From Octopus bimaculoides (taxonomy: Eukaryota), in assembly GCF_001194135.2 (NCBI RefSeq), contig NC_068987.1, forward strand, positions 12,187,828 to 12,251,827: a stretch of DNA of 64,000 nt, written 5' to 3'. The number at the start of each line of letters is the position of its first letter. Positions within the stretch are counted from its first letter, which is position 1. Below are positions 19,091-61,971 of the stretch, piece by piece. The translations under genes were made by a program, and so were the position numbers. The notes under the pieces were generated by a model. That model saw nothing but the letters and a program-made list of their open reading frames with translations, did no database searches and was not told the DNA's origin.

Positions 19091-19800
19091 GGGTGGGAAA
19101 ACCAGAGGGATACAGGAAATATTGGCATAGTATACTGTATTTGATAGCATATAAGACGCTTTTCCCAAATCAATGTCTCACAAAAATCAACCCAGGCCCT
19201 ATACACAAAGTTACTTTAAACATTAGATACTTTGATGCACTAAAATATTTTTCTCCTAAATATGTGCTGCTGAAATTGAGGTGAATCCAATATGCTCAAG
19301 CATCTTTTATGCCATTTGATATGATGTATAAAGAGTGTTATGGCTTATTAGAAGATCATATACGTAAATTTTGAGATTCTTAACAACAGTAAAATGCAAC
19401 ATATCTCCTATGATGATATTGCAGTATTTACTATCGTGAAACAGTGTGTCCTCTGAAAATCAAGAATATAATATATAATTAGTAACGTTAGAATAAGTTG
19501 ACAAGGACAGCTAGCAGCTAAACGAACTAAGAAGGGAATGTGAAAATGTCAAAGATTTTGGATTAGTGTTGGTTAAAACATGCATAACATGAATTTAGAT
19601 AAATATGAAATTATTGTGTGACAAAATCTCATTCGCTTTTAAACGGACTAAAAAATTAAAATTAATGATGTAATTTAAATATGCAGATATGTGTAAACAT
19701 TAATACAACATTTAGAATATAGATTGATTGCTATATACATCTAAAAAGAGAAGAAAATGCATTGAGAACTACATACATATAAATATACACATGTATATAA

Positions 19801-19843
<43 letters not shown>

Positions 19844-21641
19844 GACACATGCACATGTGTATTATGTAAATAATGAATTGTGTCAAATGAATGAGAGAAG
19901 ATGTTGTAGAGTATATGGTTTATTAAAATTGAATGTTTATTTTGCAATCTGAGTTTCATGCTGCAGTGAAATTCAGGCATGAGCATTCTCACCTGAAGAT
20001 TGTAGTGGCATGAAACTTGAAGAGTGAGATAACCATTCAGTTTTGATAAACTACATTAAGATACATTATTATTTGAGTAAAGGATCATAGATTGACACTA
20101 TATGAAAGACAGAGTTTATGATCCATGCTTACACGGATATCACATGTATAGATTTGTAGTCGACAGGTAAATATTTCCATTGGAACAAAAACTATCATCA
20201 TCCAATTTACATTACACAACACAATCTTGATTCTGTTTTGTCTTTCTTTTTCAACAAATATTGTGAGGTGAGATCAAAAGGAAAATAAGAGAAATATTAA
20301 TGAAGAAATATATAGAAATATTCCAGTTTGTTTTTGACATCTGATATGTTATCAAGGACATTTCTAAAATACAAACCCCAATGAGTGTCAAGAAATAATA
20401 TCTTTAAAAAAAAGGAAAAAAAAAAAAGAAAAAATGTTTGATGATATATAAACATAGAACTACATATAAAGTTACAATTACCTTGCATGATACTATTTTT
20501 AAAATATTAAAATAATATAAACTTTTATCAATAAATTGAATAAAGAGTTTAAATTTTTGTTTTAATAAAAATTAATGAGATTCTTATTATGTCAAAATTC
20601 ATCTCCAGTAAAATGCGGCGTTGAATTCTATCTGAAATGTTGTTTATAGTAGGAAGACAGGTTTATAAAATGCTCAGCTTCTTCTGTGATGCCCTTTTCA
20701 TTGAAGGAGTAAATATTTGCATAAGTTTTAAATGCTTATCATAATAAAAAATGTAATACACAAATGCATAAGGAACTTTCATTTCTGAGATTTGTCAAAA
20801 ATGTTTCATCATAACAAATCTAGTTATTCCCCTTGATTAAAAGACATCCACTTAAAAGATCCAGCATATAAAACTGCTGGATTTGTTCAGGTTGGTGCAA
20901 AGATTTTTTTATTAACTTTTTTTTTTAACTAAACAGATTGAAACTTTGTATACTTGTGGTAACATTTATTAGAGATGACCCAGAAGTTGTTCCTCTTCGA
21001 TTGCTATCACAAACAGCAGTAACTTTTTTCAGCTAAATACACATCGTTGATTGGTTGAAATTACCCAAATACGACAACACAAAATAACTTTTAAAATACC
21101 AAATTTTGTCAAAAATGGTCAAAGTATACCATGTTCTGCATGAGACATTCCACCAGTATATGAAGTCAAAAAACATTAATTAAAAAAATCTGTGAACCAA
21201 ATCGAACAGATCCAAACTGATTCTCTAGGAAAATGAATTCTTAAAATTTAGGGACACTTAGTACACACATGCACTCAAATATACACACACATGGTATTAT
21301 ATATACCTTTTTACTTTCTAATTTTAAAGAAAGATAAATTCAGTATCCACGTTTCTTTAAACAACTTGATTTTTGCTAAAAACCAGTCACATTATTTGTC
21401 TTTAACCATAAATAAGGATGGATGCTTGCAAGATATTACTGTCAGTAATATGCACTGATAAAAGTTATTTAATAAATGCAGAATGGGTTTCATATTTACA
21501 TTTCCTAACCCAGGTGCTGGTTTATTTAGAAGATTGTTTACTTTTTCATTTTCCTTTATTTTAATTTTGTTTTTTTTAATCAATTATAAATCTTTGAATA
21601 TATAACTATATAGGTTTCTTTTTAACTGGCATTCTTTGATA

Positions 21642-22840: not shown

Positions 22841-24227
22841 CTACAACAATACAAAGTATTCGTAGTCAAAGAGAATAACAAAAAGTGTATATTTTAACAT
22901 ATAGGCACAGGCATGGCTGTGTGATAAGAAGCTGGTTTCCTAACTACAAGGTTCCAGGTTCAGTTCCACTGAATGGCACTTTGGACAAGTGTCTTCTACT
23001 ATAGCTTCAGGCTAACCAAAGCTTTGTGAGTGGATTTGGTAGATGGAAACTGAAAGAAGCCTGCCGTATATATGTATATATATATGTATATATAATTAAT
23101 AATATCGAAGGGGAATAGAAATATTAGAAATTTCTACTACCGGTGGCCTAGCGTGTAATTTTATAATCTTAATTTTTTATGCTGTTGCAATATTTTCGTT
23201 AAGCCCCTTGTTCTGAAAACACAACCTTCAGTAAGGTATGATCGCTTGACTAATAAATTGGAAAAATCATTACCATATTAATTTTTTAATATTTAAACTA
23301 TTTAAACTATATTTAAGACCAAATATTTTATCTGTTTTATGTTAAAATTGGCCAAATCTGGCCTCTCTCACCTACTCGACAATGTCATTGTAAAAATAAT
23401 CACATCATTGAAACCTCAATGCTATGAGATAATGCAAGATTAATTAAGAAGAATGTGAATAAGTAAGCATCACATTTTACAGAGTAATCTGTATGCTAAA
23501 GGGTTAAGTCAACTGTTACTTTGATGCATTTAATCATAACTCTCATTTCCTTTCTTTTAAATTTTCATGTTTTTGTCAATTGGAAGATAGAGGCGAGGGC
23601 TCAGTAGGTGAGGGCTCAGTAGGTGAGGCAGATCTGTCCATACTTGGCTGAGGACTATGGAAGGGGATCAGACCTAAGAATAGGCTCATAATGTCAGATA
23701 TGGACCAAGCAAACAAGCTAGGTAGAGGTCTCGCAAGGCCTAATGCTCCATGATAAGTGAGAAGAAATAAAACCAAGACTCTTAAGTTTCACGTATATAA
23801 TATATCATATATATGTGTGTGTCTTTGTGTCTGTGTTTGTGCAACACACACTACCACTGCTTGACAATCGGTGTTGGTTTGTTCACATCCCCATTATCGA
23901 GCAGTTCAGCAAAAGAAACTGATAGAATAAGTGCCAGACTTAACAAAAGAACATAAGTTCCAAGGTCAAAAGAACATCAGCTCAAAGAACAAAAGAACAT
24001 AAGTTCCAGGGTGGGTCAATTTGCTCAACTAAAACCCTTTAAAAGGGATACCCCAGCATAGCTGCAGTGCAATGACTAAAGCAAGTAAAAGAAGATAGAA
24101 CATTAGCACCCCAATTGGAATGGTGAAATGAAAGGAATGCTGGGATGTCAGATCGGATGTCTTGTCTTATTTAGTTTGAGGCTCTTTATGTTCAGAGTTC
24201 AAATCCTACCAGATGCAGTTGGCTTAC

Positions 24228-24338
24228 CTCAGCAAGTCTGGATGCCATCTTGAACTGTCTTGATTGCTCATTGTCATCTGTATACAAATCTGTTTTGTTA
24301 CCAACAATAACGATAACTGTGTTTGGATCAACAGTTTC
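24228..24338 (-). CDS. CRACR2A: CRACR2A-like Rab domain exon (G4)
   Basis: cttccag|GAA ACT...GCT GAG|gtaagc; 111 nt, 0->0; ETVDPNTVIVIVGNKTDLYTDDNEQSRQFKMASRLAE. Confidence 0.94.
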
Positions 24339-24649
24339 CTGGAAGAAAGAAAAAGACTGGTTATGCTCGTAGACAGAGTAAATGCTTGAGCTGAGAGAAA
24401 GGAAGCAGAAAAGGAATTGAAGTAGGAGTGTAGGCAGGGAGAAAGAGATAGAGATAGAAAAAGAGGGAGAGAGAGAGAGAAAGATGGTGGGAGGAATGTG
24501 GTGTAAGATTAATGGTCTGGATTGCAAGATGAATAAAGAGGAAGTATTTAATGGAACATTAAAACAAGAAAATTGCACCAAAGCTGCATGACAGTGGTGT
24601 CAAGCATGGCATGTAGACCATCACAATTAGTTTGACATGCACATGACAT

Positions 24650-31624: not shown

Positions 31625-32010
31625 GACATGGCTGTGTGGTAAAAAGCTTGCTTCTCAACCACATGGTTCTGGGTTCAGTTCCACTGCATGGCATCTTGGG
31701 CAAGTGTCTTCTACTATAGAATATAGGCCGGCCAAAGCCTTGTGAGTGGATTTGGTAGACAGAAACTGAAAGAAGCCTGTCATGTGTGTGTGTGTGTGTG
31801 TGTGTGTGCGTGCGTTTCTGTTTGTGTTTGTCCCTCCACCACCACTTGACAAACAGTTATCCCTGAAACTTAGTGGTTCAGTAAAAGATTCTGATAGAAT
31901 AAGTACCAGGCTTGAAATATAAGTACTGGGGTCCATTCTGCCAAAAATTCAAGGTGATGCCCCAGCATGGCCACAGTCTAAAGACTGAAATAAGTAGCAG
32001 ATAAAAAAGA
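31625..32010 (+). mobile_element. Family B SINE; other copies at ~9450-9620, 14920-15110, 22308-22730, 22905-23070, 25965-26135, 28318-28720, 36600-36870, 42045-42210, 57943-58230, 58830-59140 (+) and 26140-26830 (-)
   Basis: Same head, CORE-like segment, internal (TG)n and 3' end gctccagcatggccacagtc.aatgactgaaac. Confidence 0.82.
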
Positions 32011-54159: not shown

Positions 54160-55165
54160 CTGGCAATATTGATGAACAAAATGTTAAATTGCCAATTTTT
54201 ATAATAATTTAACAGACAAGAAATTTAACATTGATTATAGATACATACCCAGCATTAGAATATAACACATTAAGAAAAATGAGATTCATTAAGTTTTGTT
54301 AATGGATAAGAATTTGGATATGTTTAGGATAATGCAAGTTCCCAAAAAATTATTTAGTAACAATTCAAGTAATAATTTAAGATCATCAAAAATGTATCAC
54401 TGAAGTATATCAAAGTGAAATTCAATTTTTATTGTCATCAACCTGTTTATAATAAACACACAACAATTTAAATCATTCCTAAAAAAAAAAATATAAAAAA
54501 ACGATTCGAAACACAAGTATTCAAACAAAAGAATAACATGCATTTATCATTCCTGTTCTTTATATAATATATATATATATATANNNNNNNNNNNNNNNNN
54601 NNNNNNNNNNNNNNNNNNNNNNNNNNNNNNNNNNNNNNNNNNNNNNNNNNNNNNNNNNNNNNNNNNNNNNNNNNNNNNNNNNNNNNNNNNNNNNNNNNNN
54701 NNNNNNNNNNNNNNNNNNNNNNNNNNNNNNNNNNNNNNNNNNNNNNNNNNNNNNNNNNNNNNNNNNNNNNNNNNNNNNNNNNNNNNNNNNNNNNNNNNNN
54801 NNNNNNNNNNNNNNNNNNNNNNNNNNNNNNNNNNNNNNNNNNNNNNNNNNNNNNNNNNNNNNNNNNNNNNNNNNNNNNNNNNNNNNNNNNNNNNNNNNNN
54901 NNNNNTTTTTTTTTTTTTTTTTTTTCTTACAAGCAACATAATGTTGACCCTTTACTAGAGGTGAATGAACTCACTGAAGGAAAATATATTATTACTCACA
55001 AAAACCAGATTATTCTAAAAAATGGCCAAAAATGCATCACAAAGGCCAGCTATGTTTCCTTCTATAGAGCTAAAAAAATTCTTTAAAACTCTAACTTGTA
55101 CAATGCTTTACAAAATCTACAACAGAACTTTGGAAAAATTATACATCTCTATATGTGTGTGTGTT

Positions 55166-55199
<34 letters not shown>

Positions 55200-55509
55200 C
55201 ATACATATATATACATGCATCATGATACTGACCAGATTATAGGATGTGGTTATACATCACTGGTCATCATGCGCTTCACATTGTTTTAACCTTTGAATGA
55301 TGCCATCCAATTGGTTAGATGAGCAGACCAACATCCCTCCTGATTGGAATTGGAAGACTATTCCATCACAGAGTTACCTATTAACAGTGGACTGGGGCAA
55401 CGTAAAATGAAGTGTTTTGCTCAAGAGCATAAAGTGGTACCTGGCCCAGGAATTGAACCCACAACTTAACAATCATGTGTGCAACACTCTAACCACTAGG
55501 CCACATGCC

Positions 55510-56261: not shown

Positions 56262-56466
56262 CTCTAGACACAAGGCCCGGAATTTTTGGGGGAGGAGTAA
56301 GTCGATCAGATCGACTACGGCACGCAACTGGTAATTATTTTATCGACTCCGAAAGGATGAAAGACAAAGTCAACCTCGGCGGAATTTGAACTCAGAACGT
56401 AACGGCAGATGAAATACCGCTAAGTATTTCACCCGGCGTGCTAACGTTTCTGCCAGCTCGCCACCC
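56262..56466 (-). mobile_element. Family C SINE (second tail type)
   Basis: Same head and central domain; tail ...CTCCCCCAAAAATTCCGGGCCTTGTGTCTAGAGTAGAAAAGAA. Confidence 0.85.
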
Positions 56467-56501
56467 CCAGTAACATTTTAAATACTATAATATATGTATC
56501 T

Positions 56502-56789
56502 TATTTCTTTATTGCCCACAAGGGGCTAAACATAGAGGGGACAAACAAGGACAGACAGTGCGTAACAACCCCAGTGCGTAACAACCTCAGTGCGTAACTG
56601 GTACTTAATTTATCGANNNNNNNNNNGCGTAACAACCTCAGTGCGTAACTGGTACTTAATTTATCGACCCCGAAAGGATGAAAGGCAAAGTCAACTTCGG
56701 CGGAATTTGAACTCAGAATGTAATGGCAGACAAAATACCGCTAAGCATTTCGCCCAGCATGCTAACGTTTTTGCCAGCTCGCCACCTTA
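56502..56789 (-). mobile_element. Full-length family C SINE with perfect 16-bp TSD
   Basis: TSD tataatatatgtatct at 56486-56501 and 56790-56805; internal short tandem duplication and a 10-N gap. Confidence 0.9.
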
Positions 56790-57676
56790 TATAATATATG
56801 TATCTGTATATAATATATATGTATCTGTATTATGAACATTAAAGTGAATTCATTTCATTAGAATTAAGGTAAACTGTTATTGTTAAAGTCTACATGCTTT
56901 AGTTTTCAGGTCAATATCCATATAACGAGCAATGAATAGCTAGTTAATGATGTTATTTCATCTATCATTCCAAACACGATGCATCTTTTATAACTTTGGG
57001 TCAATAAATGCAGGATTCAATCCAGAATGGTTATACTTCTTGCCATTCTTTAAAATTAATTACTTTCTTTCTAATTAATGCAGAAAACAGAAACATGCAC
57101 ACATTCACAATAGTGAATGTGTTAGGAAATTTTTTTAATTTTTTTAATTTTTTTATGAGCTCACCTAATTTAATCTGTTTATGACTTCAAACACTGAAAG
57201 AAAAGAGCAATCCCATAACAATACACAATTGCAGAGGTTTGGGGCGCAAAATATAGACCTACAAGGGATAGATCCTTCTCTGAACTTTAGCGAATACTAA
57301 GAATGCATCAACACAAAACTTGACAGCACCCAAGAATAAAATCTCTAAATCATGATGAGATAGATGATTCTAATATAACAAAACAAGAGAACATTTTCTT
57401 TTTTATACAAAATAAAATTTAATTTTCTAAGAACTATTAAAATAAAAACCTTTATATATGATACAAAAAAACAGAAATATTGAAAAAATATATTTAAAAT
57501 GCAGAAGCAAAGCCTAAAATTATTATATATTGAATTCCTGTATTAAAAGTATTAGAAAAGTATTTCATTAAATATATAAGTTGCTAAACGCAAAAAATTT
57601 TTTAAAAGCCATAATTTTCTAATAAAAAAAATTCACTCCTGATGAGTGTTTATTTGTATCATAAATGTATATATAC

Positions 57677-59777: not shown

Positions 59778-59855
59778 TATGGATGTAACATTAAGTCTTT
59801 GAGAAGAAATGGAATAAATTTATATGTTATGAAAATAAAGAATTGGTAAACTTAC

Positions 59856-59971
59856 TTTGATCTTTCCCTTTTTTCATCCTTTTGCTGTTGGTGTAGTTGT
59901 TGAATATAGCTGCTTTGTTCTTCTATACATTCTTGGGACTGCTTTAACCTGTACAGCAATTCATCTCTGTC
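59856..59971 (-). CDS. CRACR2A: CRACR2A-like coiled-coil exon
   Basis: taaaag|GAC AGA...TCA AA|gtaagt; 116 nt, 0->2; DRDELLYRLKQSQECIEEQSSYIQQLHQQQKDEKRERS(K). Confidence 0.87.
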
Positions 59972-60098
59972 CTTTTAAGAACCAGAATAATAAATCGTTA
60001 ATAAGGTCATTTCAGATTTAATGTTTTTTATTACGATTGTAACTAGCAATAACAATTTCTAATGATTGCACAGGGATTTTGTAAGCAGTGCAGTTTCT

Positions 60099-60332
60099 TA
60101 TTTCTTTATTGCCCACAAGGGGCTAAACTTCGAGGGGACAAACAAGGACAGACAAAGGGATTAAGTCGATTACATCGACCCCAGTGCATAACTGGTACTT
60201 AATTTATCGACACCGAAAGGATGAAAGGCCAAGTTGAACTCAGCGGAATTTGAACTCAGAATGTAACGGCAGACGAAATACCGGTAAGCATTTCGCCCGG
60301 CGTGCTAACGTTTCTGCCAGCTCGCCGCCTTT
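60099..60332 (-). mobile_element. Full-length tRNA-headed SINE (family C, Meta/Inv-like central domain), 3' part of the 5.8S chimera
   Basis: Head GGCGGCGAGCTGGCAGAAACG, B-box-like GAGTTCAAATTCC, central GCCTTTCATCCTTTCGG.GTCGATAAATTAAGTACCAG, tail AATAAAGAAATA; same family as 56502-56789. Confidence 0.9.
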
Positions 60333-60338
60333 GAAAAA

Positions 60339-60495
60339 GACTCTCGACCGGATGGGGCCCCGGGACGATGGGATCCTGGGGCCGCAATGTGCGTTCAAGG
60401 TGTCGATGTTCACTGAGTCCTGCAATTCACGTCAGTTCATGTGGATAGCCACGCTCTTCATCGACTGACAAGCCGAGTGATCTCCCGTCCAATAA
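60339..60495 (-). rRNA. Solitary, essentially full-length 5.8S rRNA copy (retroposed, probably a pseudogene), 5' part of an rRNA-SINE chimera
   Basis: Minus strand reads ...GGACGGGAGATCACTCGGCTTGTCAGTCGATGAAGAGCG...GTGAATTGCAGGAC...GAACATCGACACCTTGAACGCACATTGCGGCCCC...CCCGGGGCC...GAGAGTC: the conserved 5.8S motifs in order, including GAATTGCAG; no 18S/28S or long ITS flanks. Confidence 0.93.
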
Positions 60496-61380
60496 GCAGT
60501 AAGCAATGCAGTTTCTGTTGACCAAATCCACTCAAGGTTTTGGCATGAGACTATAGGAGAAAATATTTGCCTATGGTACCATGTACCATGCAATCAGACT
60601 GAACTCAGAACCACATGGTTCTTAACCAGAGACAAATAAAATGTAATGTCAGTTCTCATAGAATTTCAACTCAGAGTGAAAAAAATATGTAAAAGAGTAA
60701 ATTATCCTAAGCCAAAAATATACATAGCTCCGTACTACTCTGTTGAGGTCTAACAAACCAAAATAGATGTCCATATTTGTATCTTGACTGCAAGAATCAA
60801 ACTGTCCTTTGGTTAAACATGTAAATTAACTAACAAAATTTATTCCTAATTTCTTTAAATTAATACACCTTTCTCCTTGGAAGTCATTAACAACTACAAT
60901 AAGTAATTCCCCCCCACCACACACACACACATTCCTGTTCTCAGAGAAGTATTTTAATAAATTAAGAATTTATCATGTATGGAATTCCATAGAGTTCCAA
61001 AAAAGGAAGCCATGATTACTATTGTAAGGTTAGCAAAGTCAATTCTCATGTTATCAGAGTAAATGGATTTAAAGCATTGTTGTGTATATTTAATAGCCAC
61101 CTTTATATATATATATTTACAGAGAAACAGACATACAGACAGAGACAGAGAAAGGGAGAGATGTAAATATGTATATATGAATCCATGTACACACACACAC
61201 ACACACACACAATAACTGTATTCCTTTCAAATAAGTTTCATGCCACAGCAATCATCAGGTGAGAACTTACCTGATAATCACAGTAGTGTGAAACTAAGTT
61301 GCAAGAAAGAAATCTAGTTTAAAAAAAACCATATACACTACACCAAGTATTGAGTATTCTCTTCTTCAGTAGCTTTTGAA

Positions 61381-61484: not shown

Positions 61485-61798
61485 NNNNNNNNNNNNNNNN
61501 NNNNNNNNNNNNNNNNNNNNNNNNNNNNNNNNNNNNNNNNNNNNNNNNNNNNNNNNNNNNNNNNNNNNNNNNNNNNNNNNNNNNNNNNNNNNNNNNNNNN
61601 NNNNNNNNNNNNNNNNNNNNNNNNNNNNNNNNNNNNNNNNNNNNNNNNNNNATACATATATATATATACATACATACACACATATACATGCATATACATA
61701 TACACATATATACATACAAATACATATATATATATATATATACATAGCTAAGTACTTATCTACAGACATATATACATGAGTACATCATATATATACAT

Positions 61799-61837
<39 letters not shown>

Positions 61838-61971
61838 TACATATACATACATATATATATATATATGCACATACATATACATACATATATACAAACACAC
61901 ACATATACATGCATACATGCATACCTACATACATACATAGATAGATACACACACACACACACACACACATG
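61381..61971. repeat. Large compound (TA)/(CA)/(TACA) microsatellite; representative of many simple repeats in the window (e.g. 1-80, 16377-16436, 18044-18112, 39496-39542, 63168-63255)
   Basis: Directly visible dinucleotide and tetranucleotide runs, often adjoining N gaps. Confidence 0.95.

What the first reader, a model, noticed from the sequence alone, without database searches (positions are those of the whole stretch)
60081..60516. Chimeric 5.8S rRNA-SINE retrocopy inserted as one unit (18-bp TSD)
Seen: on the minus strand an essentially complete 5.8S rRNA (~60495->60339) is followed by TTTTTC-AAA and then a full-length family C SINE from its first bases to its AATAAAGAAATA tail (60329->60099). 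The whole 400-bp composite is flanked by gtaagcagtgcagtttct (60081-60098) and gtaagcaatgcagtttct (60499-60516), 17 of 18 identical. The SINE tail overlaps the target by AGAAA microhomology, as expected for target-primed reverse transcription. An ordinary copy of the same SINE (56502-56789) has its 16-bp TSD directly at the head, which serves as an internal control. Established: U6-L1 and similar chimeras arise by RT template switching or RNA ligation. Inference: a LINE RT copied a Pol III SINE RNA and then a Pol I-derived mature 5.8S RNA, or a pre-ligated 5.8S-SINE RNA. If the junction recurs, it would be a 5.8S-headed SINE subfamily or a recurrent rRNA-capture pathway; I know of no description of this in cephalopods but cannot search. 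It lies sense to the host gene, ~110 nt upstream of the acceptor at 59972.
Basis: partly seen in the sequence, partly recalled or inferred. Interest (0 to 1): 0.85.

Follow-up and report, generated by a model that had tools for sequence, protein, structure and literature searches.

The report
5.8S rRNA–SINE chimeric retrocopy
An intron holds a dead DNA copy of a complete 5.8S ribosomal RNA fused head-to-tail to a complete SINE and inserted in one event; this is a clear example of a known reverse-transcriptase template-jumping by-product with an RNA partner I did not find reported, not a new kind of element.

Summary
On the minus strand, Rfam's 5.8S model matches end to end (60496→60338, 86.9 bits). 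A ≤6-nt bridge follows, then a full-length copy of a multi-copy SINE (60332/60331→60099). The 400-bp composite is flanked by a 17/18 direct repeat, the only isolated repeat of that quality in the window at comparable spacing.

Neither half has its own duplication. The first 8 nt of the repeat belong to an older host SINE and reappear, detached from it, after the new SINE's tail, as a real target-site duplication would. An ordinary copy of the same SINE has a 16/16 duplication directly at its head. Both halves have decayed by about 6%.

The best explanation is one target-primed reverse transcription event. A LINE reverse transcriptase copied the SINE RNA to its 5' end, jumped to the 3' end of a mature 5.8S rRNA and copied that to its 5' end. 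This is the known class of single-TSD chimeric retrocopies (U6–L1, WEIRD–MgSINE, B2–U6–L1).

I found no report of 5.8S as a partner. Recurrence of the junction could not be tested, because no searchable collection holds this organism. A T5 run at the junction and the lack of a Pol III promoter in 5.8S argue against a propagating 5.8S-headed SINE. I rate it a new member of a known kind, of modest interest.

The parts
60499..60516 (-). 5' copy of the target-site duplication (AGAAACTGCATTGCTTAC on the minus strand)
   Evidence: It matches 60081-60098 at 17 of 18 positions and is the only isolated repeat of this quality in the window. Its first 8 nt (AGAAACTG) are the end of an older host SINE copy.
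60497..60498 (-). 2 nt (TG) between the TSD and Rfam model position 1. They are either the first bases of the 5.8S or extra nucleotides. Together with the bases either side they form a 6/7 microhomology: TGCTTAC at the TSD end against TGCTTAT at the 5.8S start.
   Evidence: Read directly from the sequence.
60338..60496 (-). Complete 5.8S rRNA retrocopy (Rfam model positions 1-154)
   Evidence: RF00002 at 86.9 bits, E = 3e-20, not truncated. Of 25 model pairs, 21 are standard pairs, 3 are broken, and 1 is non-standard in the consensus itself. Four pairs are doubly compensated relative to the Rfam consensus.
60333..60337 (-). Bridge TTTTC. The T's are probably the native 3' end of the 5.8S. The last 1-2 nt are either non-templated or derived from ITS2. 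With 60338 the T's form a T5 run, which resembles a Pol III terminator.
   Evidence: Sequence. This is the only run of 4 or more T in the composite. Assigning the T's to the 5.8S rests on analogy with the human 5.8S 3' end, which is my own knowledge.
60099..60332 (-). Full-length SINE ('family C'): head (T/A)AAGGCGGCGAGCTGGCAGAAACG..., a B-box-like AGTTCAAATTCC, and tail ...CCCCTTGTGGGCAATAAAGAAATA
   Evidence: At least 8 other copies or fragments in the window at 77-90% identity. Head and tail limits were set from the alignment and from the control copy's TSD. It differs from the window consensus at 14 of 171 positions.
60081..60098 (-). 3' copy of the target-site duplication (AGAAACTGCACTGCTTAC on the minus strand)
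   Evidence: It begins with AGA, as do the sequences that follow this tail in the other two copies.
60517..60640 (-). Older, 3'-truncated copy of a different SINE family (...GAGTGGATTTGGTCAAC|AGAAACTG) that served as the insertion target
   Evidence: It matches copies at 31657, 42090, 22973, 36056, 9559 and 57982. The matches run 8-12 nt into the 5' TSD copy and stop there.
56486..56805 (-). Internal control: an ordinary copy of the same SINE (56502-56789) with a perfect 16-bp TSD abutting its head and tail

Best explanation
This is a dead-on-arrival bipartite chimeric retrocopy made in one target-primed reverse transcription event.

Proposed steps:
1. A LINE endonuclease/reverse transcriptase nicked the target, which lay in an old SINE inside an intron.
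2. It primed on the 3' tail of a Pol III SINE transcript, helped by AGA microhomology, and copied that RNA to its 5' end.
3. Instead of finishing, it jumped end-to-end onto the 3' end of a free, mature (or a few-nt 3'-extended) 5.8S rRNA and copied it to its 5' end.
4. The cDNA was joined to the other side of the staggered break, possibly through a 6-nt microhomology, which produced the 18-bp duplication.

What is shown: the architecture, the single TSD, the completeness of both RNA copies, the end-to-end junction, and the similar decay of both halves. What is inferred: the identity of the reverse transcriptase (by literature, an RTE-type or other LINE that shares the SINE tail), template jumping rather than prior RNA ligation, and the germ-line timing.

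The element has no evident function and cannot propagate with its 5.8S part. The SINE's internal promoter starts transcription downstream of the 5.8S, and a T5 terminator-like run separates the two halves.
For: - The full-length 5.8S match is bounded within 2 nt by the TSD on the 5' side and within 6 nt by the SINE head on the 3' side. Copying a mature RNA molecule gives this result; capturing an rDNA fragment or pre-rRNA would not.
- The SINE is complete from head to tail.
- A 17/18 TSD encloses both parts and is unique against the window background. Neither part has internal duplications.
- Eight nt of the host SINE are duplicated away from its body.
- An ordinary copy has a 16/16 TSD directly at the SINE head. 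The extra 5.8S therefore sits inside the insertion unit rather than outside it.
- Decay is similar in both halves. The 5.8S has 3 broken pairs in 48 paired nt, about 6%. The SINE differs at 14 of 171 positions, and about 4 of those are CpGs that the focal copy retained and the others lost, giving about 6%. One difference in the 18-bp TSD fits the same age.
- Four compensated pairs show that the 5.8S template was a functional, lineage-specific rRNA.
- Precedent: single-TSD chimeras arising by LINE RT template switching are documented in mammals and a fungus, including small-RNA-SINE fusions (PMC2104539; 10.1101/2025.02.02.635956). Template switching has been proposed for SINE head exchange (PMC5729268; PMC4758252).
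Against: - No orthologous empty site, second individual or long read could be examined, so the single-event inference rests on anatomy alone.
- No authentic 5.8S or ITS sequence from this organism was available. The exact mature ends and the origin of the 2-3 bridge nt are therefore not fixed.
- In mammalian L1 chimeras the 3' partner is usually 5'-truncated, whereas here it is full length. This points to a run-off end-to-end jump rather than an internal switch.
- Nucleolar RNAs are reported as under-represented among retrocopies (PMC5322556), which lowers the prior for 5.8S as a partner.
- The window comes from a gap-rich draft assembly.
Confidence: 0.8

Rival explanations
1. RNA ligation came first. 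A 5.8S rRNA 3' end was ligated to the 5' end of a SINE RNA, in the way U6-L1 RNAs are joined by RtcB, and the LINE RT then copied the joined RNA in a single pass.
For: It gives the same architecture: a single TSD and two complete RNAs joined end to end. RNA ligation is listed alongside template switching as a candidate mechanism for sense-oriented LINE-1 chimeras (10.1101/2025.02.02.635956). That RtcB-type ligation has been shown for U6/L1 RNA is my recollection, not a tool result.
Against: These points are my own knowledge and were not tested here. RtcB-type ligation needs a 2',3'-cyclic phosphate or 3'-phosphate donor and a 5'-OH acceptor. Mature 5.8S 3' ends are made by exonucleases and carry 3'-OH. 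Primary Pol III SINE transcripts carry a 5'-triphosphate. The 1-3 unassigned bridge nt fit non-templated addition at a jump better than a clean ligation.
Confidence: 0.1
2. Two independent insertions. The SINE inserted first and made the 18-bp TSD. A 5.8S retrocopy or rDNA fragment later landed exactly between the 5' TSD copy and the SINE head.
For: Nested insertions do occur in this window. For example, the SINE at 44486-44711 sits inside the head of an older copy.
Against: The second insertion would have to hit a 1-3-nt interval. It would also have to leave no TSD, no tail and no deletion, and carry exactly a complete 5.8S. Both halves show the same decay. The reverse order is excluded, because the SINE's TSD partner lies upstream of the 5.8S and not at the SINE head.
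Confidence: 0.03
3. A copy of a pre-existing composite template. One version is an rDNA unit or orphan 5.8S locus with this SINE inserted right after the 5.8S, transcribed and then retrotransposed through the SINE tail. Another is an established 5.8S-SINE master element, meaning a subfamily.
For: It cannot be excluded, because the genome could not be searched. rRNA-derived modules do exist in some SINEs: 5S-derived SINEs and SINE28 (PMC10946416; PMC4994717).
Against: - The 5' end coincides with the mature 5.8S 5' end, to within about 2 nt of Rfam model position 1. A read-through or Pol II transcript would not be expected to start there.
- There is no room for the 16-18-bp TSD that a SINE insertion next to the 5.8S would have left between the two parts.
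- 5.8S has no internal Pol III promoter (established knowledge), and a T5 run lies at the junction.
- There is no second 5.8S copy in the 64 kb, although the window holds at least 8 other SINE copies or fragments.
Confidence: 0.05
4. Assembly artefact: short-read assembly wrongly joined rDNA-derived reads to a SINE.
For: The assembly is gap-rich, with 13 N runs in 64 kb, and both components are high-copy sequences.
Against: A misjoin would not place a complete 5.8S precisely inside a matching TSD pair. The 5.8S copy carries decay mutations such as broken pairs and a CpG-to-CpA change in the GC hairpin, so its reads would differ from rDNA reads. The region lies within one ungapped contig.
Confidence: 0.02

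Closest known systems
Bipartite and tripartite chimeric retrogenes formed by LINE RT template switching (U6-L1, U3-L1, 5S-L1, 28S-L1 and Alu-L1 in mammals; WEIRD-MGL 'MINE', WEIRD-MgSINE and WEIRD-MgSINE-MGL in Magnaporthe; B2-U6-L1 in mouse)
   Same: Two unrelated transcripts are fused in the same orientation. The 5' partner is a full copy of an abundant small non-coding RNA and the 3' partner is a LINE-mobilised element with an intact 3' end. One TSD of 12-18 bp encloses the whole unit (PMC2104539; 10.1101/2025.02.02.635956).
   Different: The 5' partner here is 5.8S rRNA, which appears in none of the lists I could read. The 3' partner is a full-length SINE rather than a 5'-truncated LINE or SINE, so the switch happened at the very 5' end of the first template. 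The host appears to be a cephalopod with non-L1 LINEs; the taxon rests on my recollection of octopus SINE sequences and was not tested.
End-to-end template jumping by non-LTR reverse transcriptases (R2 RT in vitro; my own knowledge: Bibillo & Eickbush)
   Same: The RT runs off the 5' end of one RNA, adds a few non-templated nucleotides and continues on the 3' end of another RNA. The focal junction, with both RNAs complete and 1-3 unassigned nt between them, has this signature.
   Different: This was shown biochemically for R2. Here it is inferred from a genomic fossil, and the enzyme involved is unknown.
rRNA-derived SINE modules (5S-headed SINE3, AmnSINE1 and MEG; 28S-derived SINE28)
   Same: A piece of ribosomal RNA is joined to a SINE/LINE-type 3' module (PMC10946416; PMC4994717).
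   Different: Those are multi-copy families. In the 5S-headed ones the rRNA part supplies an internal Pol III promoter. Here there is a single copy in the window, the 5.8S part has no Pol III promoter, and a T5 run follows it, so it works as cargo and not as a head.
PittSINE-type head replacement by template switching in passerine birds
   Same: It is proposed to arise when the RT copying a SINE RNA switches to a small RNA, giving a new 5' module flanked by one TSD (PMC5729268).
   Different: In PittSINE the switch replaced the old head with a tRNA that brought a promoter, and a new family was born. Here the complete old SINE is kept and the added RNA is not a Pol III gene.

Membership tests
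Template-switch chimeric retrocopy (U6-L1 / MINE class) | Two unrelated RNA-derived segments fused directly in the same orientation | tested here: met
   5.8S (60496-60338) and the SINE (60332-60099) are both on the minus strand and at most 6 nt apart.
Template-switch chimeric retrocopy (U6-L1 / MINE class) | One TSD flanks the whole composite and no TSD flanks either part alone | tested here: met
   The 17/18 TSD is unique against the window background. No direct repeat of 5 nt or more abuts either part alone.
Template-switch chimeric retrocopy (U6-L1 / MINE class) | The 5' partner is a copy of a cellular RNA that ends at its own 3' terminus at the junction | tested here: met
   The Rfam model is matched 1-154 of 154 without truncation. 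The exact mature termini of this organism's 5.8S were not available, which leaves about 3 nt of uncertainty.
Template-switch chimeric retrocopy (U6-L1 / MINE class) | The 3' partner is a LINE-dependent element with an intact 3' end, showing TPRT hallmarks | tested here: met
   The intact tail AATAAAGAAATA is shared with two other copies. AGA follows the tail in all three. The control copy has a 16/16 TSD.
Template-switch chimeric retrocopy (U6-L1 / MINE class) | Absence of the whole unit at the orthologous empty site | not testable with these tools
   No cephalopod genome is searchable. Paralogous copies of the host SINE end at the insertion point, so they cannot stand in for an empty site.
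Functional 5.8S rRNA gene | Lies in an rDNA unit between ITS1 and ITS2, with 18S and 28S nearby | tested here: not met
   The flanks are a TSD and a SINE. No SSU or LSU rRNA match exists anywhere in the window, even at relaxed E-values. Three pairs are broken.
rRNA-headed SINE family (SINE3 or SINE28 type) | Many dispersed copies share the same rRNA-body junction | not testable with these tools
   There are 0 further copies in the 64 kb. The junction pattern gave 0 hits in the metagenome and prokaryote-genome collections, and a SINE-head control also gave 0 hits, in the prokaryote-genome and viral collections (it was not run on the metagenomes). The organism therefore appears to be absent from these collections.
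rRNA-headed SINE family (SINE3 or SINE28 type) | The head supplies an internal Pol III promoter, so the whole element is transcribed | tested here: not met
   5.8S is a Pol I product with no internal Pol III promoter (established knowledge). The only T-run of 4 or more in the composite, a T5 at 60338-60334, sits between the 5.8S and the SINE. The B-box-like motif lies downstream, in the SINE part (sequence).
tRNA-derived SINE (octopus OK/OR1/OR2 type) | A multi-copy dispersed element of 150-350 bp with TSDs | tested here: met
tRNA-derived SINE (octopus OK/OR1/OR2 type) | A recognisable tRNA-related head | tested here: inconclusive
   ARAGORN found no tRNA in the window, and no Rfam tRNA match reached E <= 10 in 59900-60700. 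Only a B-box-like AGTTCAAATTCC is readable by eye.

The most novel reading that the evidence does not exclude
Capture of 5.8S rRNA at SINE 5' ends is recurrent in this genome. Either there are many independent 5.8S-SINE chimeras, which would imply that the SINE/LINE RNP carries out reverse transcription in contact with nucleolar or pre-ribosomal RNA, or this composite spread as a subfamily through read-through transcription. Either case would be a first for a Pol I-derived 5.8S.
Probability: 0.07. Interest if true: 0.6.

Novelty: new member of a known kind. Interest (0 to 1): 0.35.

Why it matters
This is an unusually clean natural record of end-to-end template jumping. Both RNAs are complete, the TSD is long, and an ordinary copy 3.5 kb away serves as an internal control. 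It would extend the list of RNAs captured by LINE machinery to 5.8S rRNA, and the phenomenon to a mollusc with non-L1 LINEs. That would suggest the SINE/LINE reverse-transcription complex can meet free 5.8S rRNA. As a single decayed intronic copy, it has no evident consequence for the host gene or for TE evolution. It would become interesting only if a genome-wide survey showed recurrence.

Tried and rejected
- Exact look-up of two junction-spanning ORFs (72 aa and 61 aa) in public assemblies, to find independent assemblies of the locus: not on record.
- Homology search with a 76-aa open frame across the junction, to detect other loci with the same junction: no candidates, not even for the SINE half. 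The collection does not index this organism's repeats, so the result is uninformative.
- Exact-pattern scans for the junction (metagenome and prokaryote-genome contigs), for a conserved 5.8S core (metagenome and viral contigs) and for the SINE head as a presence control (prokaryote-genome and viral contigs): all returned 0.
- Homology search with three concatenated host-gene exons, to name the gene and species: no hit. Pfam gave only a sub-threshold Ras match.
- Full-text search for diagnostic SINE strings, to tie the families to a taxon: 0 papers.
- Using paralogues of the host SINE as a surrogate empty site: rejected, because the host copy ends at the insertion point and does not continue into the downstream flank.
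- A relaxed Rfam scan of the whole window for other degraded small-RNA copies next to SINE heads: only microsatellite-driven miRNA false positives.
- The 7-nt CAGAAAC shared between the TSD region and the SINE head: considered as a possible private TSD and rejected, because it lies 21 nt from both 5.8S borders.

Full report
**What is in the sequence**

Read on the minus strand, the region runs as follows:
- an 18-nt repeat, AGAAACTGCATTGCTTAC (60516-60499)
- TG
- a complete 5.8S rRNA
- TTTTC
- a complete SINE that ends AATAAAGAAATA at 60099
- the repeat again, AGAAACTGCACTGCTTAC (60098-60081)

This was read. Rfam's 5.8S model (RF00002) matches 60496-60338 over all 154 model positions at 86.9 bits, against a gathering score of 42. 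It is the only family above threshold in the 64 kb, and it remains the only credible small-RNA match in a relaxed scan.

The 3' part belongs to a repeat family with at least eight other copies or fragments in the window, at 77-90% identity. Four ordinary copies begin TAAGGTGGCGAG, whereas the focal copy begins AAAGGCGGCGAG. It is therefore full length to within one nucleotide.

**Is the flanking repeat a real target-site duplication?**

I scanned the whole window for direct repeats of at least 17/18 at spacings of 300-600 bp. Every hit except the focal pair was a microsatellite or a pair of transposon or tandem-repeat copies. The focal pair is the only isolated one.

I tested this. The upstream flank (60517-60640) is an old copy of a different SINE family, and alignment to six other copies shows that it runs through the first 8 nt of the 5' repeat copy (AGAAACTG) and then ends. 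The same 8 nt reappear 400 bp away, directly after the new SINE's tail, with no other host-SINE sequence around them. Duplication of the target explains this. Two copies of a repeat would not.

As an internal control, the ordinary copy at 56502-56789 carries a perfect 16-bp duplication (56486-56501 and 56790-56805) directly abutting its head and tail.

**One event or two?**

No direct repeat of 5 nt or more abuts the 5.8S part alone or the SINE part alone.

If the SINE had inserted next to an existing 5.8S copy, its duplication partner would lie at the SINE head. It lies upstream of the 5.8S instead.

If the 5.8S had arrived second, it would have had to land in a 1-3-nt interval between the duplication and the SINE head. 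It would also have had to leave no duplication, tail or deletion, and be exactly one complete 5.8S.

The two halves have also decayed to a similar degree:
- In the 5.8S half, 3 of 24 informative model pairs are broken, which is about 6% per paired nucleotide.
- In the SINE half, 14 of 171 positions differ from the window consensus. About four of these are CpGs that the focal copy retained and the other copies lost, which leaves about 6%.
- One difference in the 18-nt duplication fits the same age.

These estimates have low statistical power, but they agree.

**What the 5.8S template was**

Four helix pairs differ from the Rfam consensus on both sides and still pair. The template was therefore a functional, lineage-specific 5.8S and not a random look-alike.

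The copy is bounded within 2 nt at its 5' end and within about 6 nt at its 3' end. By analogy with the human 5.8S 3' end (...GAGCGTCGCTT, my own knowledge), three of the junction T's are probably native, which leaves 2-3 nt unassigned. Mature termini at both ends point to a processed RNA molecule as the template, not an rDNA fragment or a long pre-rRNA.

**Mechanism**

The best-supported model is target-primed reverse transcription with an end-to-end template jump:
1. Priming on the SINE RNA tail. In all three copies that carry this tail, the next bases are AGA, which indicates priming microhomology or a target preference.
2. Synthesis to the SINE 5' end.
3. A jump onto the 3' end of a 5.8S rRNA, with one to three extra nucleotides added.
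4. Synthesis to the 5.8S 5' end.
5. Joining at the far side of an 18-nt staggered break. A 6/7 match there (TGCTTAC against TGCTTAT) suggests microhomology-assisted joining.

The architecture is shown directly. The enzyme, and the choice of jump over prior ligation, are inferred. Prior RNA ligation would give the same DNA, but it is less likely on chemical grounds: a 3'-OH on mature 5.8S and a 5'-triphosphate on a Pol III transcript (my own knowledge).

**Comparison with known systems**

Single-duplication chimeras between an abundant small RNA and a LINE or SINE are well documented:
- U6, U3, U5, 5S, 7SL, 28S, tRNA and Y RNA fused to L1 in mammals (10.1101/2025.02.02.635956)
- WEIRD-MgSINE and a WEIRD-MgSINE-MGL tripartite element in Magnaporthe, and B2-U6-L1 in mouse (PMC2104539)

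Template switching is also the accepted route for SINE module exchange (PMC5729268; PMC4758252).

A 2024 review's table of rDNA pieces found inside transposable elements lists 5S and 28S but not 5.8S (PMC10946416). One survey of tailless retropseudogenes found nucleolar RNAs under-represented (PMC5322556). I found no report of a 5.8S chimera in the searchable library. That library omits most subscription journals.

The finding is therefore a new member of a known kind.

**Could it be a 5.8S-headed SINE family?**

This could not be tested. No searchable collection holds this organism:
- The junction pattern gave no hit in metagenome or prokaryote-genome contigs.
- A 5.8S core gave no hit in metagenome or viral contigs.
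- The SINE head alone, used as a presence control, gave no hit in prokaryote-genome or viral contigs.
- The protein collection returned nothing for a junction-spanning frame, or even for host exons.

Anatomy argues against propagation. 5.8S has no internal Pol III promoter. The SINE's promoter elements lie downstream of the 5.8S part. The only T-run of four or more in the composite, a T5, sits exactly between the two halves.

**Context and caveats**

The element lies in an intron, sense to a minus-strand gene. An open coiled-coil exon begins at 59971, after AG at 59973-59972. A weak, sub-threshold Ras-family exon lies near 24.3 kb. No effect on the gene is evident.

The assembly is gap-rich, but the element lies in an ungapped 3.4-kb contig, and its private mutations make a misjoin unlikely.

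No tool confirmed it here.

Noticed in passing
window 44480-44860 (+): A full SINE-C copy (44486-44711) is nested in the head of an older copy of the same family. Old head nt 2-8 (AAGGTGG) lie just upstream, and the old copy resumes at about nt 17 (AGAATCATTAGCATGCC) right after the new tail. About 9 nt of the old head are missing and no TSD is visible. A further diverged copy follows at 44909-45099.
   Followed up: partly
window 60099, 56502, 44711 (tail ends): All three SINE copies with the tail AATAAAGAAATA are followed by AGA (AGAAAC, AGATAC, AGAATC). This suggests either that the true RNA 3' end is ...ATAAGA, or a target and priming preference of the partner LINE.
   Followed up: partly
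window 1128-1293, 39177-39342, 56294-56465 versus 44487-44711, 56502-56789, 60099-60332: The SINE family has two tail variants on the same head and body: ...CCTTGTGCCTAGAGTAGAAAAGAA and ...GTCTGTCCTTGTTTGTCCCCTC...AATAAAGAAATA. This is a module exchange that implies two LINE partners. No LINE carrying either tail is present in the window.
   Followed up: no
window 60517-60640 and copies near 31657, 42090, 22973, 36056, 9559, 57982: A second abundant SINE family has a core (CCTTGGGCAAGTGTCTTCTACTATAGCC) that resembles the MIR/CORE-SINE core from memory, so it may be the octopus OR2 CORE-SINE. It produces a sub-threshold mir-218 Rfam match at 60564-60638.
   Followed up: no
window 55149-55230, 61651-61926, 19785-19862, 41354-41428 and others: Numerous sub-threshold Rfam hits to mir-297, mir-466, mir-1277 and mir-3149 all fall on TA/TG microsatellites and are false positives.
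   Followed up: yes
window 24192-24581 (-), 39799-40434 (-), 59855-59971 (-): Minus-strand coding exons of the host gene: a coiled-coil exon (DRDELLYRLKQSQECIEEQSSYIQQLHQQQKDEKRERSK), an acidic and serine-rich exon, and a GTPase NKxD exon (IVIVGNKTDL; Pfam Ras E = 0.014, below the cut-off). The layout resembles a large coiled-coil Rab GTPase, but no homologue was retrievable.
   Followed up: partly
window 56617-56626 within SINE copy 56502-56789: The control SINE copy contains a 10-N gap flanked by a short internal duplication of its body (…TCGATAAATTAAGTACCAGTTACGCACTGAGGTTGTTACGC…, repeated). This is probably an assembly or scaffolding artefact within the repeat.
   Followed up: no
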